Assembly: GCA_900088475.1 (NCBI GenBank)
Contig: FLMG01004723.1
Coordinates: 53,969-117,968, forward strand
DNA length: 64,000 nt
Direction of reading: 5' to 3'
Source: Hyphochytrium catenoides
Taxonomy: Eukaryota > Protista > Hyphochytriomycota
Below, one piece after another: positions 1 through 18,108 of the stretch. Below the pieces are notes generated by a model. It was not told where the DNA came from. It was given only the letters and a program-made list of their open reading frames with translations, and did not search any database. The translations under genes and the position numbers were made by a program. Within the stretch, counting starts at the first letter, position 1. The number at the start of each line of letters is the position of its first letter.

Positions 1-3000
1 CACCAGGGAACACATCCAAGGTATAGTGTAGAGGTTCCAGGGCATCTTCTGTGACGATAACTAGCCTACTACCGCGTCTCGAAGGCACGTCGGCCAGAAA
101 CTCTACGGTCCATACATAGTTATTCGATGCGTGGCTCCTGGTTACGGCCACCCCGTTTATCGTCGTTAGGGCGTTGAGACTGGATTCTACCAATTTTGCC
201 GACGCGTCAATCGGCAAGAAATCGGTAAGCTCGTCATCAAATGAGATTCTGAATGGTCCTTGGGAGTCAATTAGCGTGAGCTTCTGAATCTCATTTATAG
301 GCAGACTGGTATACCATTCTATTCGATAGCTGCTCACCCGAGATCCCATAGGGTCCGGTGCCAGCCAAGTCAGTAGCAAAGAGGTTGAACTCTTCCTGAC
401 AGACGTGTTGTCATCCGGAAGGATAATCGAGAGTTGCAGCCCGCTGCCGTAAGAGATTTGCGAGGCATAAGAGCGGGAGACCAGGGAACGGGGTAATGGG
501 AGGCCCCATGCACTCCATCCTACCAAATTCATTGCCCTCACACGGAAGAAATATCGCTGCCCAGCTACTAAGCCCTCGATTGTGAGACTAAGAGTTTTCA
601 GCTTTGTCGTATACAGAGGATGGAGAGAGAAATCAGACTCCGTTCCCTCGTACCGGCCAAGTGCAGTCCCATTATTTCCACTGTTAAAAGCTTCTTGGAC
701 ATCCCATTCGACAGCATACAAAGAGGTCTTTGCGTAATTGTCAAAGGAAGGCGGTTTCCAGGACACTTGGATTGAGGTTGCTGAGCCTGCAATCCTGCGT
801 GTTATCACATCCTGCGGTTGTAACGGAGGAGCCATCGGATTCTCCTGGACACGTCGAGCTGACCTACTGGAGCCTTTGCTATTCTTGGCACTGACTTGGA
901 CGACAAATCCGCAACTTATAGCCAGACATGCAGGGTAGGATTGAGCAGTTACAGACTCTCGGTCGGAGGACAAGTCGTGCATTTCATAGACAATCGGTTT
1001 CAGAGCAGATAAACCGGAGGCATCCAGATAGTATGAGAAAACTGAACCGGTAGATCCTTGAGCACTTTCTGAAGCGAGGCATGCCAAAGAAGATCCAGGC
1101 ACCGCAGCTGCAACCTGTCCTCCACTGCATACTCTCACCAAACCCGGCTCGTTGTGTATATCCCGTAAAGAGCTAGAGCTAATGACAACATCAACTAGGT
1201 CACCCGGGTTCTCAATGAACGAGATCACAAAAACTCGTGAGGTAGCGTCATGCGTGGCTGTTATGGCTGCTGTCCGCACAAAGCTTATGCCCTCAAGGGC
1301 CGTTCTGAGATCATTTTCGGTTAGGTCGTAGCTTAGCGGAGATGTTGCTTCTCCTGCCATCGAAAGAATGAAGGAACCCCTCGTCACTTCGTTGGATATT
1401 TTAAGAGTCTGAACTTCAATCGAACCGTATTGGCCAGCAGGCCACCACTCGATATCATACCCAGCGATGCGCTCTCCCCCGTCGTCAAGGGGTTGCTGAA
1501 AGGACAGCTTCAGGGACTTCTCACTGACAATTGACAGAGAAGGAGACGTAGGCGGTAATGGCTTCACACTGTCTATCTCCAACCTAAATGGAGAGCCTGC
1601 TATTGGCAATGTATCGTAGAATAGTCGATTTGTGGGGATGATAGCCCTTGCTTGGGACAAACTAGACCAATAGAGTTTGATACTTGCAGGACCCGTGTTT
1701 TCCCTAAACTCCAGCTTGATAGGAGCAAGGCGATCATGGCTGAGGGGCACAACCGCGGTACTTGAAGCTGTCTTTGCAGTAGTCGAGTTGGAATCTCTAT
1801 CAAAATCATCAATGAGAAGCACGTTATCCACCCAGAGCCGAGCCCCATCGTCATATTCCACTGTGAAAGTAAAATTTTCAGTGAAAGGGGGTTTGACGTA
1901 ACCTGTCCAGCGGACGCTAATAAAGTCCTTGCCTGTTTCTGTTATGTGGTCAGAGGTAGTCCAGCTGAAGTCGATTTCTGCATCCACCCTTTCCATGACA
2001 GCGTCACCATACAGCCAGCGATTATTGAAATAGAAGCCGTTCAGACCTCCACCCAAGGCTTGGGAAATTTCAATATCATATACGCCTTTCCGAGGACCCT
2101 CGTACTTTACCTCGTACTGCCCGTCTGCTATGTAGGAGATGTGGACTTGAGCACTTGGAATACCCACAATGTTTCCCACAAAGCTGGGCCCAACTTCCCC
2201 GGCAACTGTCTGTACAGGATTGCCAGCAAGACCCCCTACAGAACGTGGGCAGTAGCCTCCAACACTTACCATTGGCTGCGGGCCATTGAGCAAGTACCCT
2301 TCACCATAAATCTCTTCGGGAGTTGAGCTGGTAGATTCCAGACTGATAATCCAGCTGCCAGGACCCTTTGACCCTGTGACAACTGAAGCTCGGTGGATGT
2401 CAGGTAACGTTCGCAGAGCTGCGGCCACTTCTTCTTCCGAGCTGTCACTACGGAGGTCCGGAGTGCGTCTGCCATTGTACTCGAGAAAAAAAGAACCAGC
2501 TGCATCCGGAGCTCCCTTCGCGATGACCTCTTGCTGACGATTACGGTCGCAAGAATATATTGATAACAGCGCAGGATCACCTGCTGAGGTCCGTAACTTC
2601 TTTCCATCACCTATCAAGTTAGGAACATCACCAAGCGCAGATGCAAAGGTCACTACATACTGGTAACCCGCGCGAGAGTGCTTGAATACAGCCAGTCCAG
2701 TTCGCGAGCGATGAGGGAAGGGCGCATTGAGCCGGATAATAGTGGGATCAATGCTAACTATAGCGAAGACAGGGCCATCATGACCAATTCGAATCCAATC
2801 GTCCACTGCGAACTGATCTGTCAAATCTGAGGTCGGGCGCACAACGTCTTCCAAGTAAGAGACCGTAACACTCGTTTCCGCTACAAGTATGTTGGCAGAC
2901 GAAGTAGTGACTTTGACTGCACCGAGCCCGGGCAAAGTGCCTAGAGCGAGCTGAACTTCCTGAGGGGACGCAGCACAAGAAAGCTCTACCCAGTTTCCGT

Positions 3001-6000
3001 TATATCCAATCTCAAATGATCCAGTAAGTGTGTGCGCAGGATTGCCAACTGTTGTTTCAATGACGGCAACTTCCTGGACTGGCCCGTCGAGAATTCTATT
3101 TGAGAAGCGATCGAAGCTCTCTATAAAGAAGCTTGACGTTTGCTTGTATGCCGAGAGCGGAATATCGTTTACCTTCGATCTTTCAGCACTAAGGGGAGCG
3201 GGGCGCACGTCGACCTGAAAAGGACAGACTCCCCTTTGTGAGCCAACTCCGCTGTTGTCCCCAGTGAAGATTTCGACCTCGAGATTTTGCAGTTGTGAGG
3301 ATTGCACCCCAATGACAGGAAGTGGACCGATTTGGTAAAAGTCGAGCAAGGAGCTGGTACTTGATAAAAAGGTTACGACAAAGTCATACCCTCCGGCCGC
3401 TACTAGATTCCTGGTCACTGACACTGTTCCCACTGTCGGCAAGGCGGCCAAGCTATCTGCCAAAGTAGTTGCGGCTTCAGCATCGGTTTTGAGGGCCAAG
3501 GCTGCAGCAGATATCTCCTCAGTATGGGCATCACGAAAGGTCAGGCGGATGAATCCAGATACTATATAAGGGTCACTAAACGTCAAACGCAAGACTTGTA
3601 TCTCTGGCAGTAGGACTGATCCAACAGCGGGATCCGTCTTGATGTGGTGGCTAACACCTTCGATAAGCGTCCTGGTCATGGAACGGGTCCTCTCGCCAGC
3701 TGGAATAAGTTGATCCCGCGATGCTAGTTGAGGAACGTTCCCAGCACCTAGGAAGGTCACTTCGTAGTAAAAGCCGTTCTTCGCGTCAGCGTCCGCCTCT
3801 CGAAGCTCATGACCAAACTTACGACTGACAGCAACCTTGCCAACTCCATTCAGGGCTTCAAGCGCCTTCTGCATTTCAGTCTCGGAGCAGTCCCATCGTA
3901 AGGCCCAGGTCTCTTCCCCCTCAAATTGAAGATAAAAATAGCCCCCGCGATCATAAGCTGATGGAAACTTCGTCAAGATGACTTGGACTTCGGGCTGGGT
4001 ACCATAGGTGATAGCAATGGTATGAACACCCTGAATGGTAGGGGTAAATGTGACCTTAAACTTGCCATCACCCAGTCTGGTAATGTTACCAACTGTGGCC
4101 GACTCCGACCCAGGCCTGGCATTAGGATGAAAGATATCAACCCGGAAGTGGTCCGAAGTGTCGTTCTCCTGATCGTTCCCGCCTCCATCCTTAGCCTGAA
4201 TTGTGAAAGTGGACACCTGGCCAGCCTCGCCTTGATACAGACCCCTTCCATAAGCCGTCGTGACTCCAGCGTCAGTTTGGGCTGACGTCACATTGAACAC
4301 AATTGGGCCATTGCCAACCGCTGCCGCTTCCCATCCCTTGCGAACCTGACGTACCGTCAAAGAAGCCAAATTTCCCCTGAGCTGTGAGCCATCGGCTACC
4401 ATGGGCTCGAGATCGCCCTCACTAGGAGATCGAAGGAAGGTGATTGCCCAGGAGCATGTCCTGAGACCATTGTCTGGGCAGTTAAATCTTACCACATCAA
4501 CGGTGTTCTCAGGCACATTTGACAGTTCTTCGAGTGCGGACTTCATATGTACCGCATCAACATTCCAGTCTAGCCACGTAGTCGAACGAGTAACTTTATC
4601 GCCAGAGTCATCCATCCCTCGAAACGTTAGCCGAAACTTACCGCCATTCATGTCTGACAGGGCTGAGGTGGTCACTGCCTGGATCTCAGAGACTAATGAC
4701 GAGGAAACGTCCAACCGGTAGGTTCCCTTCACTTGCGGTGAAAAGTAAATGGAGTATGTACCCGTCCTGCTACCGCCTTTGAAAACATTTACCCCAAACA
4801 AATCTGGTCCCTTATAAATGGTTTGCAGAGGCACATTGCTTGGGTCGATCACACCAGACTCTTCGCTTACCCGAATAGGTAGGCCTCCATCCAGTAACAA
4901 GGTGTCCCCTCTTTTGAGAGTATTTGCGTGATTGGTCCAGGTCGCTGGGTAACTCGCCATTCTCAACATCGAGCTACCCTTTAGAAGTATTCCTTTACCC
5001 AAATAGATGTAGTCGTTTGCAACGACTGAGCTCAGAGAATATGCCGAGGATGAAAAGCTCTTGCATTGATGCCCCGACTTGACGTAAATGCTTGTTATAC
5101 TGTTTCTTGCGGACCATTTAGCGTCCAGAACGGTGAAGATACATTCTTGACCAAGTAAAGAGATGTCAGGGTTGAAAACTGTGATTCTCATACCAGACTT
5201 CACAACAGGGTTAGAGTGCATTTGGAGTGGTGGGCTACCAACTAGGTTGAGTGCCACTCCCAATACATTGCTCTCCAAGGATACGACGCAGTGCGTACAG
5301 ATTGAGCTGGGTTCGTAAACGACGGGGCTTAGAGATACCTCCTCGTTCTTCCGGCCAACAGCTGCCCAACCAGAGATCCCAACAAGACGAACCTGCCATT
5401 TCTCTTTCCCACTATTGAAAATCTCATTGCCTCCAGCGTCCTTCGCAAGAATTTCGGCCTCGAAGACCTCCAGAGCACGGCCACCAAGTAAGCCATCGCC
5501 AGTCACCCTCGAATTGGAAGCATTTAGACTTCCTGGATGGACCTGCACTCTAAAAGGAGAGTTATCTATGTTTCTCTCATACAGCAGGAAAGAGGCTGGA
5601 ATGGGCCGGATTGTGAAGCTGGAAGAGCTCCATTGTAGGTCCAGGTAAGCAGCGCCGCGAATGTGGACGTACTCGACAATAAAGCTGTGTGGATAGGTGC
5701 TGTTCAAAGATATTGAGCCCGATACGGCACCGCCGGTTGTGGTCCGGTTGTTCGAAGAGATGGAGTCCAGGACAATATGCCCAGCTACAGTGAGGCGGAC
5801 GTGGTCCCCGGCTGTTGCTGCAAAGGTATATAGGTCCGACCGTGGCACCCTAATCCTTCCTGTGAGCCGAAGGCTAAAATATTCTGCAGGAAAGTTCGGA
5901 AGAGGTGATCCCTCATCCCACCTGAGACTTAGCGAGGAGAACAACGCGCTCGAGTCACAAGGGGTCAACGCAGTCCCTGATAACCGCAATGAGGGAGAAG

Positions 6001-9000
6001 GACAGTGCCGAGACGAGCCAAGAACAGGTTTCGTAAAGTTAGTGTTACGAAATAGATTCCCAAGAAGACCGCCCGGACGAGTAATAGTTGCCTGCAGCTG
6101 GTGCTCTCCAGTTACCTGAGGAGTAAAGGCCAAATTGTATCTACCAAGTGCCCTTTGCTTGTGATTCGTTGTTGCTGTACTTGTGCTCATTTGACCAGTG
6201 GGATCGCTCACCTTTAGAGACAGAATGTCTTCCTCTAAAGGGCTTTCAACAGCATTCAAATAGTAGTCTCGTAACTGAACGGAGAATACGCTAGGCTCGT
6301 TTACCACACCTACCGGTTTGGCGTCGTGGGTACACATTACAGGATCTACCTCGCCAGCCCGCACACGCAGCCCTTTGGCTGTCGACGTTAGAATGTCCTC
6401 CTCATTAAAGCTAATTTGGACATCATAGTGCCCGCTGATCTCTGGCGTGTATGCTACGATTAGGGCCCCGCTGTCATCTTGAGGCAGGATGTAGTCTAGG
6501 CCTTGAACACGCTGCTTTATCTCGACTTCAGCCACAATACCCGTAAGCTGTGAGGCCGTCATAAGTGGCAGGTTTGTGTATCTCTTGAAGTTTATCAAAA
6601 TCTCCGTGCTATCATCCGGATCGCAGACTGTTCCCTTAGTGGCGGAAACTGACACAGGGAAGCCAAAAGAGTTAGCTATTTGCTCCTCGAACGCAGATAT
6701 TGTGGTTCCAGCCAAAATATTAGCAGTAAGGGTGCTATTGCCAATGCCGAGAGAGAGCAAAAAAGATCCACTACCGGCGCCAGACAATCGGCAATGTAAA
6801 GACTGTACTTCGTGGCCCTCAATCCTAACTGTCCTAGTAGAGTCTCTGGCGCCAGCATGTTCCTCTGAGATCAGGAAGTCCAAATTGGCACTGCTACTAA
6901 CTGAGGGTAGGTCAACATTGCCAGCATCGGTCGAATAAATGAGCCTAATCTCAGATGAAGTGCCCGAAGGGCATATTACTGGAAATGCAAGAGACCTGCC
7001 CAAAGGTTCAGCAGAAACGCCTAGTGTCCTGATGGCATTGTTCAAAGCTTGAACGCTGTCCCGAGCCATAAGACTCACTGAGCCAGAGTTAAATGTGAAA
7101 GATATTGCCGCCAGATCACAATTCTCCGACTCAGGGCAGCGACAAGAAAGGATCTGTGTCTCAGCTAGACCCGGCACATAAGCTTGCATCGACATACGAA
7201 TGGAGATGGTATCGAGGCTCTCCAACGGTATGTCATTGCCTACCGTCCCATTTTGCAGTTTCCTCGTCATCACTTGAGGTGGTGCCTGGTCATCCGGATG
7301 CTGTATACCATCTGAGAGGACTTGGACAGGCTCTAGGTTGCCAACCGTCCATTCTTTCTGTCCGTTAAAGACAAGAGTATAGATATTCCAGACGTATGGA
7401 CTCCGGTCCCTTAGGCGCATTGGATCGAATCCAACAGAGTCTTTGACAACCGTAACCGAGAGACCGTCTTCCAGCGCGTTGATAGCAGACTGTACAACCT
7501 CAGCATCAGCATCCCAGGGAATTCCTTCCGTCAACATGCTGCCAAATTTCAGCTGAAATGTCCCCCATATCGGATGTAGCCCTTGGACGACCGGAATCTG
7601 TCCCGAATTGTCCTCCACTTCGAAAATTTGAACCCCAACTATGGATTTGTAGGCAATCGGGGGCAGGTCCCCAAGGGCATCCTCAAAGCGAATTACAACT
7701 CTTAGAGGGTTAGAACTTGCACAGATTACTTGTGAATGGTCGGAGGGCTGAATGACAGTGACGGGCGTTATCTCCGAAAACACTGATTGGAACCGAGCGA
7801 TCGAGTCCGTCGCTTCCAGAGTCCGACTTACACCTCGGAAACTGACGCTGAAGCGTCCCGAACTGCCCGTGCACTTCAAGCTTTGGATTTCAGGGCGGAA
7901 GGAAGAAGCGGCATGAGCAACTCTTCCCTGAACTATCGTTTGTACATCATAGAGACGCTGGTCTCGACCTTGCAGCGTGAAGTTTGACAAAACTCCTGCT
8001 CTGGCCTGTTCTAGACCAAGGCCGTAGGCTATTGAGCTTGCAGCGTCAGGAGGTCCCGGGCGAACATTTATCAAAAAGGGACTGCCTATTACATCTAAAC
8101 CATCGCTGCTCCTGACACTAAGGGAATAGGAACCAGATACGAAAAGCGTGTAACCAATGTCATATACTCCAGACTGTGCAGGTGCTTTCACAGTCAATAG
8201 TCCCGCTAAGTTGTTCGACATCTCGACAATCTCCAAAGGCTTAGCACGCCATGCGTCATAGTCATGGATCCAAGTTATGACCCATTCGACCTTTGTGAGC
8301 TTGACACTCTTGGTCACCAGGACAGTGCTCAAACCGTCCGAAAGCGAATCCAAGACAACCTTCAATCCGTACCTGGAAATTGAAGGGGAGATTTCGACGG
8401 TAGTCATGTCACCATATGAGAGCTTAAAAAAGCCCTTAGTCACCGTTTTATCCTCAAGGGTTAGCGTTTGAACTGCCGATGACGATAGAAAGCGCCCTGC
8501 TTTAGAAGAGAACAGCTCCGCGATAAAGACATCTGGCTGCCCTGGGCTAGTCCTCAAGTTTGAGAACTGATCTAAGGCTGATACTCTAAAGAAGCTCTCA
8601 ACTCCTGAAACAGTTATCGAAAGGCCAGCATCAGGCGGTACACCGCCGTCAGACACAGTTGAGCTCTGAGGATGGAGATCTCCGTGATGGACTATTAACC
8701 CGCCGTACCCTACTTGCTGAGAGCCACAGTTGTTGATACCGGTGGGGCAAACTTTGATCGGGACACCATCCACTGCTACTTCAACGTCATAAGTACCAGC
8801 AATAGTGATGGTGTAACGAATCACATAACTTCCATCACCGCTGTCGCTGACCTGACCATAGAAGGAAATATGCGAGTCACTCTGTTTTCTAAAGCTGGCA
8901 GTAAAATGTGAGCCTCCCCTGTCTAGGTAATTCCCAAAGCTATCGACAGCTTGGATAGAGAAGACCCCTACCTCCCCTGCCACAGCTGCCAGTAGGCCAT

Positions 9001-12000
9001 TGGGTGAAGGAGACGACAGCGGAGCCGCGTACGAAGTAAGGTGTGAAGCTTGAGCCGGGTGGACCTTAAGGTCAAAAGGACTGCACCTTTGCTTCTCGCC
9101 CTTTCCGCAATAAATGTCAGTGTCGGCAGACCTTATGTAGAGCTTGTAGAATCCGCTCTCGTAGACGTTGTAAGTCACTCGGTACTGGCCCGCACCCAGA
9201 TAGGTAGGAACCATATCGGGCGCCACCTTTCCAACGGATGACTCGATGTATACCGAAAAGATGTCTCCGCTAGTAGTCTTATTATTTCCGAATTTGTCCT
9301 TAGCCTGGATGGTAAATGAAGCTTTTTCCCCTGCTATGGCCTCATTCAAACCGCTACCGAAAGCGGTTGTATACGGAAAGTCTGCTGAACCAGGCAATAT
9401 ACTGACAGCTGCTGGACTTCCCACAACGTGCATGGGATAGTAGAGATAACGGGTCGGTATAATCTGCCTAAGCAGGCTAGGGCTACTCCAGTATAGTTGG
9501 CATGCCGCCGGCCCTTGACTGTGAATGTACTCGATGGCCACATCATGAAAGTTGCCACTTTGCAAGGAAGCTGTAACTCTTAGTTCCCTGAAATCTGGAG
9601 TTCCCATGGGTCCCAGTAAGTCATTATCAGCATCTAAAAGTAGGTTGTGATCAATCCACAGTCGTACAGCTCCATCCGTGAGGACGTAAAGGGTATAGGT
9701 CTCAGTGGTGGGTGCCAATAGTTTGCCATCCCATCGTACACTAACAAAGTCTCCAGCATCAGGCGTGAGAAGACCATTCCCCCATTGGAAGTCAATCGAT
9801 GGGTCCACTCTTTCTTCCACCGGATCCCCTGTGAACCACTGGTTGTTGAACAAGGTAGCGGTGAGCCCACCCTCCAACAGCTGCCGTGTTACAAGCAAAT
9901 ATTCTCCTGGAACTTTGGGTTTGTAGCTTCCTCTATAATAGGGCAAACCAAGTACCTCTTTTCTCACATCAAGCGATATCGGCCCCTGAGAAGTTATCGC
10001 ATTCTGAGAACCATCGACCACCTTGATGACCCTTGTATCCGAAGAGATAGTGCCGCGCAGTCGACTTTGATCAACGACAATGAGCTCTTGGCTCCCGAGG
10101 TTGCTTAGAAAGGTGACCAGGAAATCGTACTGGCCAAAATCTCGAGAGATCCGCAATGTGCGAACAAGCCCCACAGCCGATATAGCTTGTAACGCCTGCG
10201 ACACCTGATTGGCAGTTGCATCATTAGGGAGCCATTCGGTGCTTCCTTCCTTGAAGTTAAGGCGAAAGAACCCTGTTATCGGTGTTGGGATTCCGCCCGC
10301 TATGCGGACCCTTTGCACCTCGTACCGGACAGCACGCGCTTGAAGCAAAGGCAAGTTTCCGGGTTGGCGGACAAAGGTAACCGTCCATCTTCTGCCATTT
10401 GAAAGAGGGGTCATACTCACAGCGACCGTATTCACACTAGGCAGCTTCTGCAATTGCCACTTCACTTCGGTTGCTGTGGCGTCAAATGAAATATCTGCTG
10501 TCACGTCCCCCGCAAAGCCAATAGTGAAAGTGCTTCCTTGCATTATTGGCGAAAAGCCTCTGTTTGCCTCGCTAATTGATATGGCCCTCACGCCTAGCCT
10601 TCCTTGTTTAGGAGAAGTCCACATTGCTATATCCCCGACAGGACTGTGAAACGTCAGTAGCCAGTCAACTCCACTTGGAGAAGTCGCTACAGAAGCCTGA
10701 ACGGAATAGCTCGGGAACATTGATTGCAGTGTTTCTGTCAATGATCCGCTGGTCATTGAGGTCGTCACGCTAGCAAAGTTGTCTGAACCAAAAGGGCCTA
10801 GCTGGAAGAAACCGGGTTGCCCCAAGTCATCTAGCTCAATCGAAACAAGCTGGACCTCGGGGATAAAATCATCTGACGCAGCGAGAGTAACGCTCTGAAC
10901 TTCAGCGAGGCCCGCCCGAACTTTTAGAAACAACCCATTCCGACTCAATTGAGGCATAGGGTTCACTGTGCCTGGGACGATCAGGAACTCCGGCACATTT
11001 CCGAATAGTTCCTTGAATGTCACAGAGAAGGTGAAGACTGAGCTCCCAGAACGGGAGACCTCTACCTCGCCCATCTGTAGGCCAAAGTCTGTAAGTAGAA
11101 GGTTGCGCAGGATCTCCGCGCTATCAGAACTATGCCCTTGAAGCTCTTCCGCAGTTATCTGTCGGCTTTCAATCATCGCCCCCTCTCCAAGAAAGGTTGA
11201 TGGATCCCACCGGATCGAGAATGTTCCGGTTGCACGTGCGGACAAATCAAAACTTTGGACCTCAAGAATTGAAGGTTGATAGGTGGCTAGGCCCCCGTCA
11301 GCAACCCATTCGGGCCTACCGGTTGCACTGAAAGATTTGTTCCAGAGCTCGCTAAAGAAGATATCCTGTCCTTTGAAATTGCTGGGTGCATCCGAGTCTG
11401 TAACAACATTGCCAGATGCCTTTTTGGGCTCGATGATATACTCATTCCTCCTGCCCTTCACAAATTCCTCAACAGTAACAAGATTAGATGGAGTACCCGT
11501 CACGAGAGGGACGTCACCTAGCTCCTCTAAAAACGTAATACGCCACACCACAGGCGATCCCACTACTCGATCATCCTTAGATACATGGACGTCACCGATC
11601 TTGAAGACTTTCGAAGAAAGGAAGGATGCAATATCTGCAGCCGTAGTGGTAGCCGTAAAGGTTGGAGATTGTAACCCCATGAAGCCAAGGGAAAACGTGT
11701 CAGGGTCCACTCCTTTAAAGGTCACAGTCTGAACTTCAGAAACGTAGCCGGTGAAGCCTGAGATCAATCCAGAGCCAGAGAGCGTAGTGGCAAATGGACT
11801 AGAGCCGCTTCTGGCAATGATAGTTGCAGTGGTAGGGCTCGGAAGCCCGTCTCCTATGGCGTTCAGGGCCACAACCTTAAAAGCATACGTAGTGTCTGCT
11901 TTCAGATTCTTAACAGTGTAGGAAAATACCTGCGGTGCATTTCGCCCATCATATACCATTACTGCTGCGCTGGCCTGCTGGTAAAAAGAGTCCACTCGGA

Positions 12001-15000
12001 TGCGTGCCCCCTCCCCAGTCAACAGACCGCCCTTGGCTACCAGCTGCGAGACAGGACCAACAAGGGTGGTGAAGGTCACTAGCCATTCAGCTGCGCCACA
12101 TCCAACATGCTCAAGCCGATTCTTGGACACAGTCACCAGCCCTACCCCCTCGAGAGAAGAAAGAGCAAAGGCTAGGGTTTCCGCATCAATATCCGCAGAC
12201 AGTGCGGCCGTCTCACTGTCCAAGTAGCTCAGTGTGAAAGACCCTCCTAAACACTCAGTGCCCTGTCTAACCCTAGCAAGGGATGCAGACTTCAAGGACT
12301 CTAGACCTTCTGCCAGAAACACTAGGGTGTTTACAGGCCCTAGATCGAGACTAAACGTTATGCTGAATTCAAGGCGATATCCAGAATTCGTGTCCATCAC
12401 GACACTTACGGGCTCGTTATGGAGTAAGGCGCGGAGCTCCACCTCAATTCTGTTTGTGATTTGAGAGTCCATCATAGAAATCGAAGAAGATAAACTCAAC
12501 ACCCCCGTTGCTGGAGAAGTATACTGGAACCGGAAAGTGCCACCTTCAGCTTCAATGATCAGTCTTTTGATCTCAGCCTGTTGAGGCTTAACCTCAGTAA
12601 AGATGCGCTGAATGGCAGACTTAACAGGAGCTGGTTCTGATGGGCTTTGGAGGGGAACTCCAGGAAAGGCATACAACTTGTAGCCAGTGATTGGACTCCC
12701 CCCATCAAAAGCAGGAGGCTCCCACTGCAAGGTCACAGAAGAGAACAGTACATCGGGTACGCTTAAGCTGAGGCTGGGTGAGTTTGGGGGGTATGCCAAA
12801 TTACTATTTGCAAGGTTGGACTGAAGCCGCCGATGAGCAGGAGCTTCCACATCTTTGATAATTGGTACCATTGGACTTCCTGGAAGCACACTGCAAAGAA
12901 TCGTTGTCGTTGAGCTCTTACTGCTGCGGCCCTGCGCATTGATAGCAACAAGGAAGAAGCTATACGGTACATCCTCGACAGCGCCAGGAAACTCAAATAT
13001 CCAGGGATCAGAACTGACGCTCCCGCGTAGCTGGAAGTCACCATCCCCGCCATTGTCACTATAAACCTCATACTTTAGTATGGGGCTCCCGCCGTTGTCC
13101 AGGTTTGCCTTCCAAGAGAGCCATATACTGCCGTCTCCCATGATATTGGGATCTCCGATATTGGTTCTAGATGAGCGAGAAGGTGCATTTGGTGGGGGAG
13201 GTGGCCTTGGTGGCCGCACGAAAAAGGAAGATTCCGGACTTGACTGCCCAATGCACACTGCTTCCTGTGCAAGACTATCACAGCGGTTCAAGGCACGTAC
13301 AAAAAAGCGATATTGCCTTCCTGCCTCAATGAATATTCCGTCCTGCGAAGTCCGCAAAGTGTATTCCATTATATCCGGGCGGCCAGTACCGTCGTAGACC
13401 ATCCTTGAACTTCCCCCGGTCCAATCATCTACGAACAGTTGATAACCATCAACTGCTGCACCTCCGGTGAGAGTAGGATGAAGCCATCCTACCTTGATAG
13501 ACGTTGCCGTGGACTCTATCAGATAGACAGGAGGTGGCGGTCCAGGCTCCAGGTTACTTGGAATGACGTATGCAGGATGAGAAAGCCTTCTTTTACCGTA
13601 TCCAAAAGCGTTCTTGGCGTAAGCTCGAGCGAAGTACTTTTGGCCCGTTCTTAGATTATCCATAGTGACGTCATACGGTCCTGCTCGGGACAGATCGTGG
13701 ATATCCATGGTAGTGACAGGAATTGTTCCTTCAGCGATTGAAGCCGTGTTCACGTCAATGGAGACACAACCTTGAAGGCCGTTCTTAAGGACAACCAAGC
13801 TATGCGGGCCAAGTATGTTACAGACGTCAAGATTGGGCCCTTTTCGCATGCAATCGCTGAACGTCACAAGCCATGAGATGCTCTCATCATCAATGACCTT
13901 TGTTACTTCCACACGACCCACATTGCTCAGAGCTTCAAGCGCAAATTTGACATCCTCTGACGATGAGAACCAGTTCAGCGCCGAAGAGACCTGATTGTTG
14001 AATGATAGCTGAAAAGTTCCTCTCAGGCTGGACGATCCTGGCTGGAGCATAGTTACCTTGACACGGGACGATAAGGATCCTCGAGACCCAAGCATTCCAG
14101 TGTCGTCTGCAGTGAGGGCTGCTACTAGACCGGTATTAGCTGGGAAAGCACCAGGATTAGACGTGAAAGTCACAGTCCACTTGTACTCCTGACAGGGTCC
14201 TGGTCCACTGCGGGTAACTTCGACATTGCCGATATTTGGCAGTTCCTCTAATGCGGCCTTCATTTCGGTGTCTGCAGCATTGTAGTGCAGGGGCCGTGTT
14301 TTGAACCCGCGAAGAGCTAGATTGAAGGAACCGTCTAACTGATTGCCTATCTTAGCACCAAGAGCACCACCTTCCGCGGCTCCTTTCAAAACAACTACCT
14401 CAGCTCCGTTACCCACCAGCTTGTAATCCTGGATGCTTACTGAAAGGCGATCAACATTGCCTCCTACCAAAGGTCCGAGGAAAGTCACTAGCCAGGTTTG
14501 GGAGTTATCGCTTCCTAGTGAGGCGGATACCGTGCTTACTTGCACTCCTCCAACCCCAACTGAGGACATAGAATTGAGCTTAGACGCAAAGGCATTCGCG
14601 GTAGCGTCATAGGAAATGGGTTCAGAGACTTGCCCGCGGAAGGAAAGTCTGAAGGACCCTGACAGTGGCGCTTCGCCTTTAACACTTTCAATGATATCAA
14701 TGCGCCTATTTCCTTGGAGCTGAGACACATCTGAACCCAGAGAAGGCATATCCCCGGCAAAGCCATTCACCGAGTTGAATGTCACCTGAAAACCAGTCGT
14801 ACAACCATTCGTAGGACACGGAGAGCAAGCTTGCAAAGACCCAGGCACAAATGTGACCGTGACATCAGCCAACGGCTGGATTGCCATTAGAGCTGCTCTG
14901 ATCGCCGCTGCTGTCGCGTTGTGCGCTATTGGTGGGGACCTATATCCTTCAAAAATGAGCGCAAAAGTTCCACCAGATGCATCGCATGTTAGAGTCTGCA

Positions 15001-18000
15001 TTTCGCTTCGTTGAGCTCCTGAATAAGTTGATTTTGTTTGAACAACCTGCACCTCATACTCTGTAGTTACTGTCTGGGTTTCCACAACTTGGATAGTGGA
15101 AAGTGACGTGCACAGAATGTCAATGGATAACACCTTATCCGACGGCATCGACTCAAAGAGCTCTACGCGGTAGCTGTCGATGGGTTGATTGCTATGCTCA
15201 GTACCTCCATCGATGACAGCGACCCTAACAGTAGACGCATCAATGTTTTCGATAGCGACGTTCAAAGGCGCCTGCGGGGGTTCTGTAACAGGAGAACTCA
15301 TTTAGCGAATCCTGTATGTCTGACCAAGAGCTAAGACTACGTACGTGGATATGGGATTCCATAAAGAGACTTCACCATTCTGTACTGCCCGGTCCCTACA
15401 AGGTTGGCGGCTCCCACTCGAATGAAGTATTTGATGCCTTGGTCCAATCCGGTGATGACGTAGGAGAGCTGGTTCGGGTCATCAACAAACACTGATCCAA
15501 TAGGAACTCCTGGGTTAGAGGTGCGTCAGTACTCAATATGCAAGCACCTAAACTACGTGGTGTCAAAAACTCACCAAGCGCCGGATCGAAAGTGTTAAAA
15601 GCTGGGAGGACCCCGGGCCTGACTTTCCAGGACGACGCGGTGGGTACGGTTCCGGTAAGCGACTTTGTGTCTAGGTTCAGTGGCGGCTGCTCTCCTAGAA
15701 GCGAATGAAACGTAATAAACCACGTGAATCCACCACTTGGATCGGAGATTTCCCGAGTCACGCTCACAGATCCCATGGAAGGCAAAGCCTCTAGCGCCCT
15801 TTCGAGCTCGACAGCCTCAATATCTGTAGGAAGGTACGAAGTGCGCTGCCCGCTGAATTCTACCGCAAATTCCCCACCAAGAGATATGCTGTCCCCAGAC
15901 GTTGACGTGGCAACATAAAGGGAGGTACTTTCCGATCCGCTAGTATAACTGCTGCTTGCAGAAAGGCTTCCCTTTACAGTCCCTTTCATACCCACCTTCG
16001 ATACCATTTGATCAAGCAAAATGGTAGTACCATCGCTCGCGAACTTGGTAGCAGTATCAAAGGTAACCAGCCACCGACATGTTCCAAGTACATTGTCTAA
16101 TACTTCGGTATTGACAGTCACTTTTCCCGCTATCTTCAACTTCTCAAGCTCAACCCTGATAGCGTTGACACTGCCATCTACACAGATGGCTGGATCTGGG
16201 CACACAGAGACTGTATCATAGCCAATTGTGACTGCCTGGCTGGGAGTAGTGCCTGTCGCAGAAAGAACGCGCATAGCCTCCACGTCGCCATCTAGAGCGT
16301 TGAAGGTGACCATCACTTCACACGTCATCAGAGAGTAGGGGGTATCGTGGGATACAGCGACGTCTCCGACGCCTCGCAAAGAAGAGAGGGCTGCCCCAAC
16401 CTCATTAGCCAGAGCTCCACAGTTCCCGGAAGGATTAGCAAATATACTCCCAGTCACTTGCCCAAGAAAAGCGATGCGAAAGGACGTTCCTGGGCTGATA
16501 CCGTTACTATTTACAGTACTGGTTTTGATTGTCTGCACCTCACGGGTACCGAAACAACTTCCCCCTTCGGGATTGAGCGGGATCTCTCCAGTCTCGATAC
16601 CCGAGAGAGAGAGCGTGAACACCAAGGTGTCAACAATTGGTGAGACACCAGAGATGACTTGAGATTGTATCACTTGCACCTCCTTCCTGGTTCCTGAACG
16701 ATTCTTGAGGATTGTTATGTGTGCTTGCCCATTGGCAACAGAAAGTGAGTTATGGTAGCCGATCAGTGCCAAAGGGCCACTTTCAGTCTCAGATGTAAAG
16801 TGGATATCCCATGAGAAGCCGCCTTGTAGATCTGGCCCTTGGCGGTTAACTGTCACCCGCCCTTCAATTGTTGACAGAGCTTCAAGGGCGGCTTTGAGGC
16901 CGTTCTCGCTGATATCGTAGGGCAAGGAACCGGTGGTGTCGGTCAGCGCACCCTTGGAGTAACTAAGAGCAAAAGTGCCAGAAATGGAGTTTCCATCTAC
17001 CAGCGTTCTCACTTCTATACTAGCCTTTTGGCTACCACTTGAAGTCCTAAGGACGGTAGAAGGCGCCACTGCCAACAGCGGCATGTCTCCTGCGTTTCCG
17101 GGCCCCAGGAAGGTGATGGTCCAGGCGTATCCTCTTTCGTTGTCAGGCCCTGATCTAAGCACGTCTACCCTATCAACAGTTGAGAGCTCCTCCAGCGCCC
17201 TTCTTAAGGTATCTGACGACGCATCACTGGGTAAGCTTGTAGTCGAGTGTCCCTCAAAGGTTAATGCAAAGAAGCCAGAAATAACGTTTCCATCTTGGAG
17301 AGTCGAAATCTCCACGTTGGCTCCTACGCCGAGGAGAGCACTGCTTCCCACTTCCATCTGGGGTACGTCTCCCATAGAGGAGGGAAACGTAATCGTCCAG
17401 CTATATCCTCCCTTAGCGTTGCCGGCACCCCCAGAAACAGTAATTCCAGGGTTTATATTATGCATCGCTTGAAGGATGGATGTCACTGAATCACGTTGAG
17501 CACCTGCGGCAGGCGCGTTGTAGGCAATAGTGCCTGATGTCTGTCTACTACCTCCATTTGCTGTCGTGTCCACAGTCAAAGAAAAGTATCCTCCTAGAAC
17601 TTCTCCAGGAGCGACCGCTGTTGACACGATCTGGACTTCTTGAATTTTCTCGGCTGACGTCGTGATGACTTGGACCTCACCCACAGGGTCTGCTGAAGTT
17701 GTGAGTGTTTGTATTTCGTTCGGCCCCAAATTGACAGAAGTCCTGATAGCTTGGACCTCTTGAACGCCAGGATCGGGGTCCCATTCAATCTGCGACAAAG
17801 GATGCGCTAAGCTTTATGCCATAAATTTGTCAATCATAAATCTACCTTGTATCCCCTAATACGACTGCCTCCATCACTTCGTGGAGGTGAATATTGAACT
17901 AGCAGGGAAGAATGAGATAAGGGAGTTACAGCCGCTACTACTGGGGCGTCCGGTACAGAAGGGCCTATGGCAAAATGTTGTTACTGAGAACAATGCCAGC

Positions 18001-18108
18001 AATTTACGTTATGACTGCTAACCACGCGGAGCACGTACCTGACCCTGCTACTACTGGAGCCAGCAGCAGCACTCTTGCTAGCCATACCAGGCAGAACATA
18101 GTTGTCAT
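1..18108 (-). CDS. Giant secreted multidomain protein (signal peptide, Fn3, filamin/ABP280-type Ig repeats, 3 PA14 domains, many EVQ...WxVTF repeats); >5,950 aa, 3' end outside window
   Basis: Exons 18108-18039 (MTTMFCLVWLARVLLLAPVVAGS, signal-peptide-like), 17964-17846, 17789-15575, 15509-15345, 15282-<1; GT-AG introns of 74, 56, 65, 62 nt with consistent phases. The frame at 15280 (PPQAPLNV) is the same frame that reads YVWTVEF near position 110, and the ORF track lists no terminated ORF in that frame. Fn3 motifs (PPxxDGGSxIxGY; YVITGLDQGIKYFIRVGAAN), filamin motifs (TAFGSGLNEAIAGEKASFTIQAKDKFGN), PA14 motifs (GGLNGFYFNN...FISVRWTGY...DDGARLWVD). Confidence 0.93.
1600..2055 (-). other. PA14 domain within the giant protein
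   Basis: GGLNGFYFNNRWLYGDAVMERVDAEIDFSW...DFISVRWTGYVKPPFTENFTFTVEYDDGARLWVDNVLLID; boundaries approximate. Confidence 0.85.
5570..6075 (-). other. PA14 domain (divergent) within the giant protein
   Basis: GGLLGNLFRNTNF...SLRWDEGSP...YFSLRLTGRIRVPRSDLYTF...DHVRLTVAGHIVLD; boundaries approximate. Confidence 0.75.
9430..9875 (-). other. PA14 domain within the giant protein
   Basis: GGLTATLFNNQWFTGDPVEERVDPSIDFQWGNG...DFVSVRWDGKLLAPTTETYTLYVLTDGAVRLWIDHNLLLD; boundaries approximate. Confidence 0.85.

What the first reader, a model, noticed from the sequence alone, without database searches (positions are those of the whole stretch)
9900..17964. 'Matryoshka' protein: recursively nested domains balanced like parentheses inside split Fn3/filamin folds
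Seen: the recurring ~110-aa unit has a first strand (EVQxIxT-like) and a body (GxFxLxFxG..T..I.YNA...+..AL..L..+..V.V....WxVTF...GD+P.L). Strands are often stacked first and bodies follow later. Module 1 (17960-15385): Fn3 N-half (PPRSDGGSRIRGYKIEWD), 4 stacked strands (EVQAIRT, EIQTLTT, EVQVITT, EVQIVST), 3 bodies, a unit containing another unit (2 strands, 2 bodies), a last body, then the Fn3 C-half (YVITGLDQGIKYFIRV): 6 strands, 6 bodies. Module 2 (15280-13590): 4 strands (KVLSIDI, IQVVET, EVQVVQT, EMQTLTC) and 4 bodies inside one Fn3. Module 3 (~12740-11840): 2 and 2 inside one Fn3. The filamin-like region at ~11280-9950 has 4 and 4. In module 2 the outermost strand carries a lone Cys (DILCT) and the last body a spare Cys (LQGCV), as expected if they pair. 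Inference: each domain is inserted after the first strand of the previous one, so the chain runs out and back. That would build double-linked, force-resistant side branches on an Fn3/filamin backbone, i.e. a branched extracellular scaffold from one polypeptide. I know of no description of this recursive architecture, but cannot exclude one.
Basis: partly seen in the sequence, partly recalled or inferred. Interest (0 to 1): 0.88.

Follow-up and report, generated by a model that had tools for sequence, protein, structure and literature searches.

The report
Nested phage-like domains in split Fn3
The start of a giant secreted protein of a probable stramenopile carries small phage-like domains inserted one inside the next, four deep, within single fibronectin-type domains; this is a rare recursive protein architecture not described for this family in the literature I could search.

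Summary
Window 18108..2 (minus strand) is the 5' part of one giant gene: a signal-peptide-like start, four short GT-AG introns and at least 5950 codons.

- **The unit.** It holds about 29 copies of a ~105-aa unit: an EVQxIxT first strand plus a body. The unit has no Pfam family. It is homologous to the "CTE-like" domains of mycobacteriophage Bxb1 (gp23, profile E 1.3e-28).
- **Counts.** Strands and bodies balance in each module: 6/6, 4/4, 2/2 and 4/4.
- **Models.** AlphaFold2 gave pLDDT 91 for module 2 and 79.5 for the module-1 insert. Solved Fn3 domains superpose on module 2 across residues 1..575, so the split Fn3 closes. Solved phage CTE domains superpose on outermost strand plus last body (module 1, 8..726, about 610 aa apart) and on strand 2 plus body 3 (module 2, 59..416). 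Pairing is therefore last-in-first-out.
- **Supporting evidence.** A cysteine in the outermost strand co-occurs with one in the last body in orthologues. The architecture is collinear in Ectocarpus and oomycete proteins.

Recursive insertion is already known in cyanobacterial RNA polymerase (six levels). The mechanical "branch" function is only inferred. The filamin host at 11280-9950 is weakly supported. This scan had already noted deeper nests in other DNA of the same genome.

The parts
18039..18108 (-). Exon 1: ATG plus a hydrophobic signal-peptide-like segment (MTTMFCLVWLARVLLLAPVVAGSG), followed by a GT-AG intron (18038-17965)
   Evidence: Sequence read. Collinear with the hydrophobic N-termini of orthologues P0003 and P0036.
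17846..17964 (-). Exon 2: N-terminal half of the module-1 Fn3 (strands A-C)
   Evidence: Pfam fn3 positions 6-33 of 84, E 0.02. Orthologue alignment runs across the junction.
17616..17759 (-). Module 1: four stacked EVQ first strands (EVQAIRT, EIQTLTT, EVQVITT, EVQIVST)
   Evidence: Strand matrix scores 15.6-21 bits. Predicted strands E12-19, E26-33, E39-45 and E52-58 at pLDDT 82-92.
16689..17615 (-). Module 1: bodies 1-3, which close strands 4, 3 and 2 in that order
   Evidence: HMM hits. Superposition ranges 49..165, 37..264 and 22..364.
15933..16682 (-). Module 1: a unit split after its second strand (16682-16569 and 16202-15933), with a complete unit inserted in it (16547-16203)
   Evidence: HMM hits 3-36, 2-100 and 31-101. 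Superposition range 415..531 for the inner unit. pLDDT is only 45-75 here.
15609..15932 (-). Module 1: last body, which closes the outermost strand about 610 residues upstream
   Evidence: 9d9x_Ha, 9d9w_Aa and 8giu_1 superpose over model ranges 8..726, 10..727 and 9..724.
15346..15507 (-). Exon 4: C-terminal half of the module-1 Fn3 (YVITGLDQGIKYFIRV)
   Evidence: Pfam fn3 positions 47-77, E 0.016. Introns 15574-15510 and 15344-15283.
15146..15280 (-). Module 2: Fn3 N-terminal half
   Evidence: The AlphaFold2 model superposes on solved Fn3 domains over 1..575.
14981..15136 (-). Module 2: four stacked first strands (VLSIDILCT, TIQVVETQT, EVQVVQT, EMQTLTC)
   Evidence: Predicted strands E50-58, E62-70, E77-83 and E94-100 at pLDDT 88-96. 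The orthologue consensus has four EVQ strands.
13727..14980 (-). Module 2: four bodies, closing strands 4, 3, 2 and 1 in that order
   Evidence: HMM hits. 9d93_Md superposes over 59..416 and 9d9x_Ha over 91..202. Cys57/Cys505 co-occur in orthologues.
13550..13726 (-). Module 2: Fn3 C-terminal half
   Evidence: Pfam fn3 positions 50-78. Solved Fn3 domains superpose with Z 9-12.8.
11813..12784 (-). Module 3: Fn3 N-half (12784-12662), two strands (12616-12587 and 12574-12545), two bodies (12544-11972), Fn3 C-half (11965-11813)
   Evidence: HMM and strand matrix. Pfam fn3 3-35 (E 1.9e-5) and 48-82 (E 5.7e-7). 31 collinear orthologues. Not modelled.
11450..11743 (-). A simple contiguous unit (strand plus body)
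   Evidence: HMM 2-106, iE 2.4e-22.
10007..11269 (-). Four units arranged [S B][S [S B] B][S B], with one two-level nest (outer strand 10903-10874, outer body 10552-10322)
   Evidence: The filamin host on its flanks (11470-11336 and 9961-9893) is supported only weakly and not by Pfam.
2..9880 (-). Rest of the same open frame: PA14 domains, filamin repeats, Fn3 domains, further units and split filamin repeats that host units. It runs off the window.

Best explanation
Window 18108..2 (minus strand) encodes the N-terminal ~5950 residues of a giant secreted multidomain protein of a probable stramenopile.

Its backbone is made of Fn3, filamin-type Ig and PA14 domains. Into the C-C' region of single Fn3 domains are inserted 2 to 6 copies of a ~105-residue alpha/beta domain, the 'EVQ unit', which is homologous to the CTE-like domains of mycobacteriophage Bxb1. 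Some filamin repeats further downstream appear to host units in the same way.

The unit's first and last strands lie at its two chain ends. A whole unit can therefore sit in the turn after the first strand of another unit. Repeating this gives runs of first strands followed by the same number of strand-less bodies, paired last-in-first-out. The chain goes out through the strands and comes back through the bodies, and the host Fn3 closes around the whole insert.

Shown here: the counts, the homology, the conservation, and the predicted topology. Inferred: because both ends of each insert leave from one point of its host, the inserts hang as side branches that carry no load along the backbone while the host is folded. 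They would display clusters of possibly glycan-binding domains on an extracellular fibre or adhesin.
For: **Gene model.** Open frames and introns. The spliced product is collinear with orthologues across all junctions.

**Unit and counts.** 29 unit copies. 26 strands against 0.1 expected by chance. Balanced counts per module.

**Homology.** The unit profile matches Bxb1 gp23 at E 1.3e-28. A single unit matches at 2.1e-8. Superpositions reach Z 14.5 at 31% identity.

**Topology in the models.**
- Module 2, pLDDT 91.1: solved Fn3 domains span 1..575, and one CTE-like domain spans 59..416.
- Module-1 insert, pLDDT 79.5: CTE domains span 8..726, 10..727 and 9..724. The other last-in-first-out pairs appear at 49..165, 37..264, 22..364 and 415..531.

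**Cysteine pair.** Outermost strand and last body co-occur in orthologues: 20 both, 3 and 0 single, 11 neither; Fisher 1.3e-6.

**Conservation.** 33, 31 and 19 full-length orthologues of modules 2, 3 and 1 at 30-40% identity, including Ectocarpus, Saprolegnia and Aphanomyces.

**Balance in homologues.** Across 122 homologous proteins, strand-run length correlates with the following body-run length: r 0.63, against 0.15 +/- 0.04 in shuffles.

**Phage relative.** Solved Bxb1 gp23 shows three unit N-halves followed by three C-halves.

**Fn3 halves.** Complementary half matches in Pfam.
Against: - The topology rests on AlphaFold2 models made from shallow alignments (34 and 20 sequences). I could read them only through the first and last aligned residue of superpositions. 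No coordinates or contact maps were available.
- pLDDT is only 45-75 in the unit-in-unit part of module 1.
- The module-1 Fn3 closure and all of module 3 were not modelled.
- The outermost strand of module 2 is degenerate in this genome.
- The strand detector misses about 11% of strands in homologues (1509 strands against 1700 bodies).
- The cysteine and run-length statistics are not corrected for shared ancestry.
- No RNA run was listed, so splicing rests on orthologue collinearity.
- Secretion, glycan binding and the mechanical role are inferences.
- No membrane anchor or C-terminus is visible in the window.
Confidence: 0.82

Rival explanations
1. Strand complementation between molecules. 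The stacked first strands complete the strand-less bodies of neighbouring molecules, as in donor-strand exchange or 3D domain swapping, and so weld the giant proteins into a network instead of closing within one chain.
For: Strand and body counts balance under this reading too. Monomer AlphaFold2 models cannot tell cis from trans pairing. The outer strands must wait unpaired for up to about 610 residues of synthesis.
Against: The models close every pair within one chain at high confidence. The host Fn3 also closes in cis around the insert, which brings partners together. The innermost units are contiguous and need no partner.
Confidence: 0.06
2. The stacked strands are a separate small beta-meander or a linker. 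The bodies are complete domains that simply lack the optional first strand, so this is an ordinary tandem array behind a strand-rich spacer.
For: Each body carries its own C-terminal strand, which resembles the EVQ strand and can be aligned to it by the HMM (hits 302-412 and 1243-1358).
Against: A spacer has no reason to hold exactly as many strands as there are strand-less bodies. Solved single CTE domains superpose with their first strand on a stacked strand and the rest on a distant body. The cysteine in the outermost strand co-varies with one in the last body.
Confidence: 0.05
3. First-in-first-out pairing: strand 1 pairs with body 1, strand 2 with body 2, and so on. This would give a crossed, interlaced topology instead of a nest.
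For: The counts alone do not distinguish it.
Against: The superposition ranges fit only last-in-first-out pairing: 59..416 in module 2; 8..726, 22..364, 37..264 and 49..165 in module 1. The innermost strand with a cysteine at position 9 has its partner cysteine in the adjacent body: 87 of 102 adjacent pairs. The outermost-strand cysteine pairs with the last body.
Confidence: 0.02
4. Artefact: a mis-assembled or non-coding repeat region that only looks like a nested protein.
For: No RNA run was listed.
Against: The frame stays open for 5100 codons. The introns are canonical. The product aligns collinearly at 30-40% identity with proteins from many other genomes. DNA runs hold the stretch.
Confidence: 0.01

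Closest known systems
CTE and CTE-like domains of mycobacteriophage Bxb1: C-terminal extension of the major capsid protein gp14 and tail tube gp19, and three copies in the tail-tip cage/Dit gp23 (PDB 9d93, 9d9x, 9d9w, 9d94). Similar domain in phage Patience (8giu).
   Same: The fold and sequence family are the same. Profile E is 1.3e-28 to gp23. Superpositions reach Z 10-14.5, rmsd 1.8-2.3 A and 22-32% identity. The EVQ first strand and the GGxFxL...YNA...AL motifs are shared. By sequence, gp23 also looks nested: three N-halves in a row, then three C-halves.
   Different: The phage copies are terminal decorations or a three-copy block in virion proteins. In gp23 the break is after the third strand (HMM position ~58), not after the first strand. 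Here the units sit in a eukaryotic secreted giant protein, inside Fn3 (and probably filamin) hosts, four deep in this window. I did not check the nesting of gp23 on its coordinates.
SI3 insertion of cyanobacterial RNA polymerase beta' (sandwich-barrel hybrid motifs, HABAS). PMC13114784 reports it as a six-level recursive insertion, the deepest example it describes among 2.7 million classified domains.
   Same: One small domain family inserted recursively into itself (A1-B1-C-B2-A2 repeated), giving several nested levels in one polypeptide.
   Different: The fold is unrelated, the setting is cytoplasmic and bacterial, and there is one such block per protein. Here the units are a different family, extracellular and eukaryotic, with many nests per protein and Fn3 or filamin hosts. 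The depth in this window (four units plus the host) does not exceed SI3. Stacks of up to 12 strands occur in public homologues.
Giant Fn3/filamin/PA14 proteins of stramenopiles, such as the Ectocarpus unnamed product P0001, Saprolegnia parasitica SPRG_04153 (labelled 'Titin' in UniRef) and Aphanomyces hypothetical proteins
   Same: These are orthologues. The three modules are collinear at 31-40% identity, with the same strand and body counts.
   Different: They are annotated only as hypothetical or titin-like. I found no description of the unit or of the nesting.

Membership tests
Bxb1-type CTE-like domain family (no Pfam entry) | Significant sequence similarity to the solved phage domains | tested here: met
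   Unit profile against PDB: gp23 E 1.3e-28 and capsid protein E 0.0019. Single unit: gp23 E 2.1e-8. Unit HMM on gp23 halves: iE 5e-12 to 2e-11.
Bxb1-type CTE-like domain family (no Pfam entry) | Same three-dimensional fold, including the first strand | tested here: met
   Predicted models superpose on 9d93_Md (Z 14.5, 103 residues, 1.9 A), 9d9x_Ha (Z 12.4 and 10.9) and 8giu_1 (Z 10.3 and 9.2). The query side is a prediction.
Bxb1-type CTE-like domain family (no Pfam entry) | Glycan or cell-surface binding function | not testable with these tools
   PMC13252515 says only that baseplate accessory proteins of Bxb1 and Douge interact with cell-wall glycans. I could not read the Bxb1 paper.
Fibronectin type III domain (host) | Match to the Pfam fn3 profile | tested here: met
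   Complementary half matches: module 1, positions 6-33 and 47-77; module 3, 3-35 (E 1.9e-5) and 48-82 (E 5.7e-7); module 2, C-half only. fn3 is above the gathering score for the whole frame.
Fibronectin type III domain (host) | The two halves form one seven-strand sandwich | tested here: met
   Module 2 model: about 45 solved Fn3 domains superpose with 92-99 residues at 2.0-2.6 A and Z up to 12.8 over 1..575. Not modelled for modules 1 and 3.
Recursive (nested) domain insertion, A1-B1-C-B2-A2 as defined in PMC13114784 | Each inserted domain lies wholly within a sequence gap of its host domain, over several levels | tested here: met
   Superposition ranges show the pairs 8..726 > 22..364 > 37..264 > 49..165 in module 1, and 1..575 > 59..416 > 91..202 in module 2. 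This rests on predicted models.
Filamin/ABP280 repeat as host of the units at 11280-9950 | Match to a filamin profile on both flanks | tested here: inconclusive
   Pfam finds nothing at E up to 10. A filamin HMM built from this protein matches 13-49 at iE 0.23 and 59-81 at iE 0.42. Further downstream, split filamin halves around units are significant, iE 2.7e-6 to 4.8e-8.

The most novel reading that the evidence does not exclude
The EVQ/CTE-like domain may be a dedicated self-nesting module shared by actinophage virion proteins and stramenopile or alveolate giant surface proteins. On this reading it grows by repeated self-insertion at the turn after its first strand, reaching 9-12 levels in relatives, which is deeper than the six levels reported for RNA polymerase SI3. 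The result would be load-shielded side branches on an Fn3/filamin fibre. The outer strands must stay unpaired during hundreds of residues of synthesis, which would make this a natural system for studying deferred, hierarchical folding.
Probability: 0.4. Interest if true: 0.8.

Novelty: new variant of a known kind. Interest (0 to 1): 0.7.

Why it matters
Domain insertion is usually one level deep. Here one small domain family is inserted into itself again and again at one fixed site, inside Fn3 hosts. The architecture is kept from brown algae to oomycetes.

- **For structure prediction and domain classification:** it is a stress case, because partner segments lie up to about 610 residues apart.
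- **For folding studies:** it gives a natural example in which an N-terminal strand must wait for a body made much later.
- **For protein mechanics:** it suggests a way to hang many binding domains on a fibre without putting them in the line of force.
- **For evolution:** the clear homology with a mycobacteriophage virion domain links a eukaryotic surface-protein module to phage decoration domains. That phage protein has a solved structure and appears nested at a different site.

Tried and rejected
- **Pfam, PHROGs:** Pfam does not know the unit. PHROGs gives only two sporadic matches, to a major tail protein and a tail sheath.
- **tblastn of one unit against the phage collection:** no match at E 1e-3. 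I fetched Bxb1 by accession instead.
- **A general cysteine test of last-in versus first-in pairing across 122 proteins:** only 9 non-adjacent stacked strands carry the position-9 cysteine, so it was uninformative. Only the module-2 outer pair gave a signal, and this repeats.
- **Model coordinates:** none are given to the sandbox. Pairing had to be read from superposition ranges.
- **RNA evidence for the introns:** none was listed. Only DNA runs of the same organism hold the stretch, so I did not use read laying.
- **The Bxb1 structure paper (PMC12124961):** not held.
- **Literature searches for this architecture:** nothing found for stramenopile giant proteins or under 'matryoshka' or 'Russian doll'.
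- **Transmembrane segments in database homologues:** none found, but most of those proteins are fragments.
- **Similarity among nest-mates:** they are not closer to each other than to other units, so there is no sign of recent in-place duplication.
- **Weak hit to OCM5 (9ufe), E 0.67:** rejected as evidence for a mastigoneme link.

Full report
**What is there**

The finding lies on the minus strand in one very long gene.
- Stop-to-stop frames show an 805-codon frame (17813-15399), a short exon in another frame, and a 5100-codon frame (15301-2) that runs off the window start.
- The frames are joined by canonical GT-AG introns at 17845-17790, 15574-15510 and 15344-15283.
- Upstream, an ATG at 18108 opens a 23-codon hydrophobic, signal-peptide-like exon (MTTMFCLVWLARVLLLAPVVAGSG).
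- The spliced product has 5950 residues within the window and no stop. It aligns without breaks across all four junctions with three orthologues, including their hydrophobic N-termini.
- No RNA run was listed, so the splicing rests on that collinearity.
- Pfam recognises Fn3, PA14, filamin and a GEX2-type Ig domain, but nothing in the repeated unit.

Residue numbers below are the 'old numbering', which starts at window position 17980. Numbering from the ATG at 18108 is 18 higher.

**The unit and the counts**

An HMM grown from one clean copy finds 29 significant copies of a ~105-residue unit. Its consensus is SSEVQVLTLSAS...GGSFRLSFRG...AEELKSALEALSNVG.V.VSR...Y.WLVTF...GDLPLL.

Copies that begin at HMM position 11-14 lack the EVQ strand. 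A 12-residue matrix built from 149 contiguous strand-plus-body units gives 26 hits of at least 11 bits in this protein. Shuffles give 0.1, and no hit falls between 6 and 11 bits.

| Region | Strands | Bodies | Notes |
|---|---|---|---|
| Module 1 | 6 (aa 54, 68, 81, 94, 413, 460) | 6 | One body is split after its second strand (HMM 3-36, then 31-101) by a complete inserted unit |
| Module 2 | 3 strong + KVLSIDILCT | 4 | In 33 orthologues the fourth strand is a canonical EVQ strand |
| Module 3 | 2 | 2 | |
| 11269-10007 | 4 | 4 | Arranged [S B][S [S B] B][S B] |

The Fn3 halves give complementary partial Pfam matches:
- Module 1: positions 6-33 and 47-77.
- Module 3: positions 3-35 and 48-82.
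- Module 2: C-half only, positions 50-78.

The one exception is the label 'filamin-like' for 11280-9950. Pfam finds nothing there. A filamin HMM built from this protein gives only weak complementary halves on its flanks, iE 0.23 and 0.42.

**Relatives**

Searches found giant proteins from Ectocarpus, Saprolegnia, Aphanomyces, diatoms, a dinoflagellate and many metagenomes.
- Modules 1, 2 and 3 are each collinear over their full length at 30-40% identity, in 19, 33 and 31 proteins respectively. The architecture therefore predates the split of brown algae and oomycetes.
- Units within this protein share only 23% identity on average. Nest-mates are not closer to each other than to other units.
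- Token strings of strands (S) and bodies (B) in 122 homologues repeat SSSSBBBSSBBB, SSSSBBBB and SSBB.
- Strand-run length correlates with the following body-run length: r 0.63, against 0.15 +/- 0.04 in shuffles. This is not corrected for shared ancestry.
- Other family members hold stacks of up to 12 consecutive EVQ strands.

**The topology test**

I could not obtain model coordinates. I therefore used the first and last aligned residues of superpositions on solved structures.

*Module 2.* AlphaFold2 with 34 sequences gave mean pLDDT 91.1. The four stacked segments are predicted as beta strands at pLDDT 88-96.
- About 45 solved Fn3 domains superpose with 92-99 residues at 2.0-2.6 A over model range 1..575. 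The N-half is residues 1-45 and the C-half about 520-577, so the split Fn3 closes around a ~480-residue insert.
- The top hit is a single domain of Bxb1 gp23 (9d93_Md, Z 14.5, 103 residues, 1.9 A, 31% identity). It spans 59..416, which is strand 2 plus body 3.
- The capsid and tail-tube CTE domains span 91..202, which is the innermost contiguous unit.

*Module-1 insert.* This is the contiguous exon 17789-15576, modelled with 20 sequences. Mean pLDDT was 79.5, and lower (45-75) in the unit-in-unit part.
- The 93-residue Bxb1 capsid CTE superposes with 90 residues at 2.3 A over 8..726. Two more entries span 10..727 and 9..724. The outermost strand therefore completes the last body, about 610 residues away.
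- Weaker rows give 49..165, 37..264, 22..364 and 415..531. Every last-in-first-out pair appears, and no first-in-first-out pair does.

*Independent support.* The cysteine of the outermost strand of module 2 co-occurs with a cysteine at the end of body 4 in orthologues: 20 with both, 3 and 0 with one, 11 with neither; Fisher 1.3e-6, not corrected for ancestry. The cysteine at strand position 9 of innermost strands has its partner in the adjacent body in 87 of 102 cases.

**What the unit is**

The unit profile matches the tail-tip cage protein gp23 of mycobacteriophage Bxb1 at E 1.3e-28, and the capsid protein's C-terminal extension at E 0.0019 (single unit). [quoted passage not shown] The fold is a small alpha/beta sandwich, with distant RRM-like and flagellar-cap-like matches.

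Read with my HMM, gp23 has three unit N-halves in a row, with EVQ strands at residues 268, 329 and 389. Three C-halves follow. The solved domain that superposes on my model is 388..524, which is the innermost contiguous copy. The solved phage protein therefore looks nested as well, with the break after the third strand. I did not check this on its coordinates.

**How it most likely works**

Shown here:
- A secreted-type N-terminus.
- A backbone of Fn3, filamin and PA14 domains.
- Units inserted in the C-C' region of Fn3.
- Predicted last-in-first-out nesting.
- A conserved cysteine pair across the longest-range contact of module 2.

Inferred:
- Each insert enters and leaves its host at one point. 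The inserts would therefore be side branches that carry no load along the backbone while the host holds.
- A module presents a compact cluster of up to six units.
- During synthesis the innermost unit can fold first and the others close outward, while the outer strands wait unpaired.
- A binding role for glycans is a guess. It rests on the PA14 domains and on the phage relatives' place on virion surfaces.

**Rivals**

- Pairing between molecules cannot be excluded by monomer models (about 6%).
- A strand-only mini-domain (about 5%) and first-in-first-out pairing (about 2%) are contradicted by the superposition ranges, the counts and the cysteines.
- An assembly artefact is excluded by the open frame and the orthologues.

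**Novelty**

- Recursive self-insertion is known. PMC13114784 reports six levels in cyanobacterial RNA polymerase SI3, among 2.7 million classified domains.
- I found no description of this family or of these giant proteins as nested.
- Earlier notes of this scan report deeper nests, including nine levels. They lie in DNA of the same genome before this window's start, and the gene appears to continue there. I could not read that DNA.
- This window adds the gene's start, three Fn3-hosted nests, a second insertion site, the phage homology with sequence statistics, and the test on this window's own sequence.
- I rate it a new variant of a known kind, with interest 0.7.

Noticed in passing
window 8629-8102, 8047-6374 and 3148-2063 (minus strand): Further downstream in the same protein, filamin repeats are split into N- and C-halves around EVQ units. 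Matches to a filamin HMM built from this protein: 3057-3128 / 3205-3232, 3251-3284 / 3771-3808 and 4884-4933 / 5215-5245 (old aa numbering), with iE from 2.3e-4 to 4.8e-8. Filamin-type Ig domains therefore appear to act as hosts too, once for about four units.
   Followed up: partly
window 5518-4697 (minus strand); insert about 5353-4769: Another split filamin repeat (HMM 3-56 at aa 4094-4148 and 63-86 at aa 4344-4367) encloses about 195 residues that are not an EVQ unit and match no Pfam family. This is an unidentified inserted domain.
   Followed up: no
L001 13928-15985 (Bxb1 gp23, AF271693 18927-20984): The solved phage protein gp23 has three unit N-halves (aa 269-324, 330-383, 390-444, each with an EVQ strand) followed by three C-halves (about 444-524, 525-566, 566-608). 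By sequence it is nested after the third strand, a different site from the eukaryotic nests.
   Followed up: partly
window 16682-15933 (minus strand): A second insertion site within the unit: one unit is split after its second strand (HMM ~36), before the helix, by a complete unit. The model confidence is low here.
   Followed up: partly
P0034 aa 245-414; P0053 aa 2814-2931; P0021 aa 2190-2308: Public homologues carry stacks of 12, 9 and 8 consecutive EVQ strands. Nests there may be much deeper than in this window.
   Followed up: partly
PDB 9ufe chain EA (OCM5), residues 205-293: The unit profile gives a non-significant hit (E 0.67) to a chain named OCM5. The name recalls Ochromonas mastigoneme proteins, but I found no paper. 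This is a lead only.
   Followed up: partly
AlphaFold DB clusters matched by the module-2 model: The matches include EGF-like or tenascin-like proteins (the organism column was blank). The Atlas search names Oomycota as the commonest phylum for its EGF-like clusters. Also matched are proteins named Fibrocystin-L and PKHD1L1, bacterial 'MBG domain-containing' proteins and a phage minor tail protein. TM-scores are low because only single units align. The unit's wider spread was not mapped.
   Followed up: no
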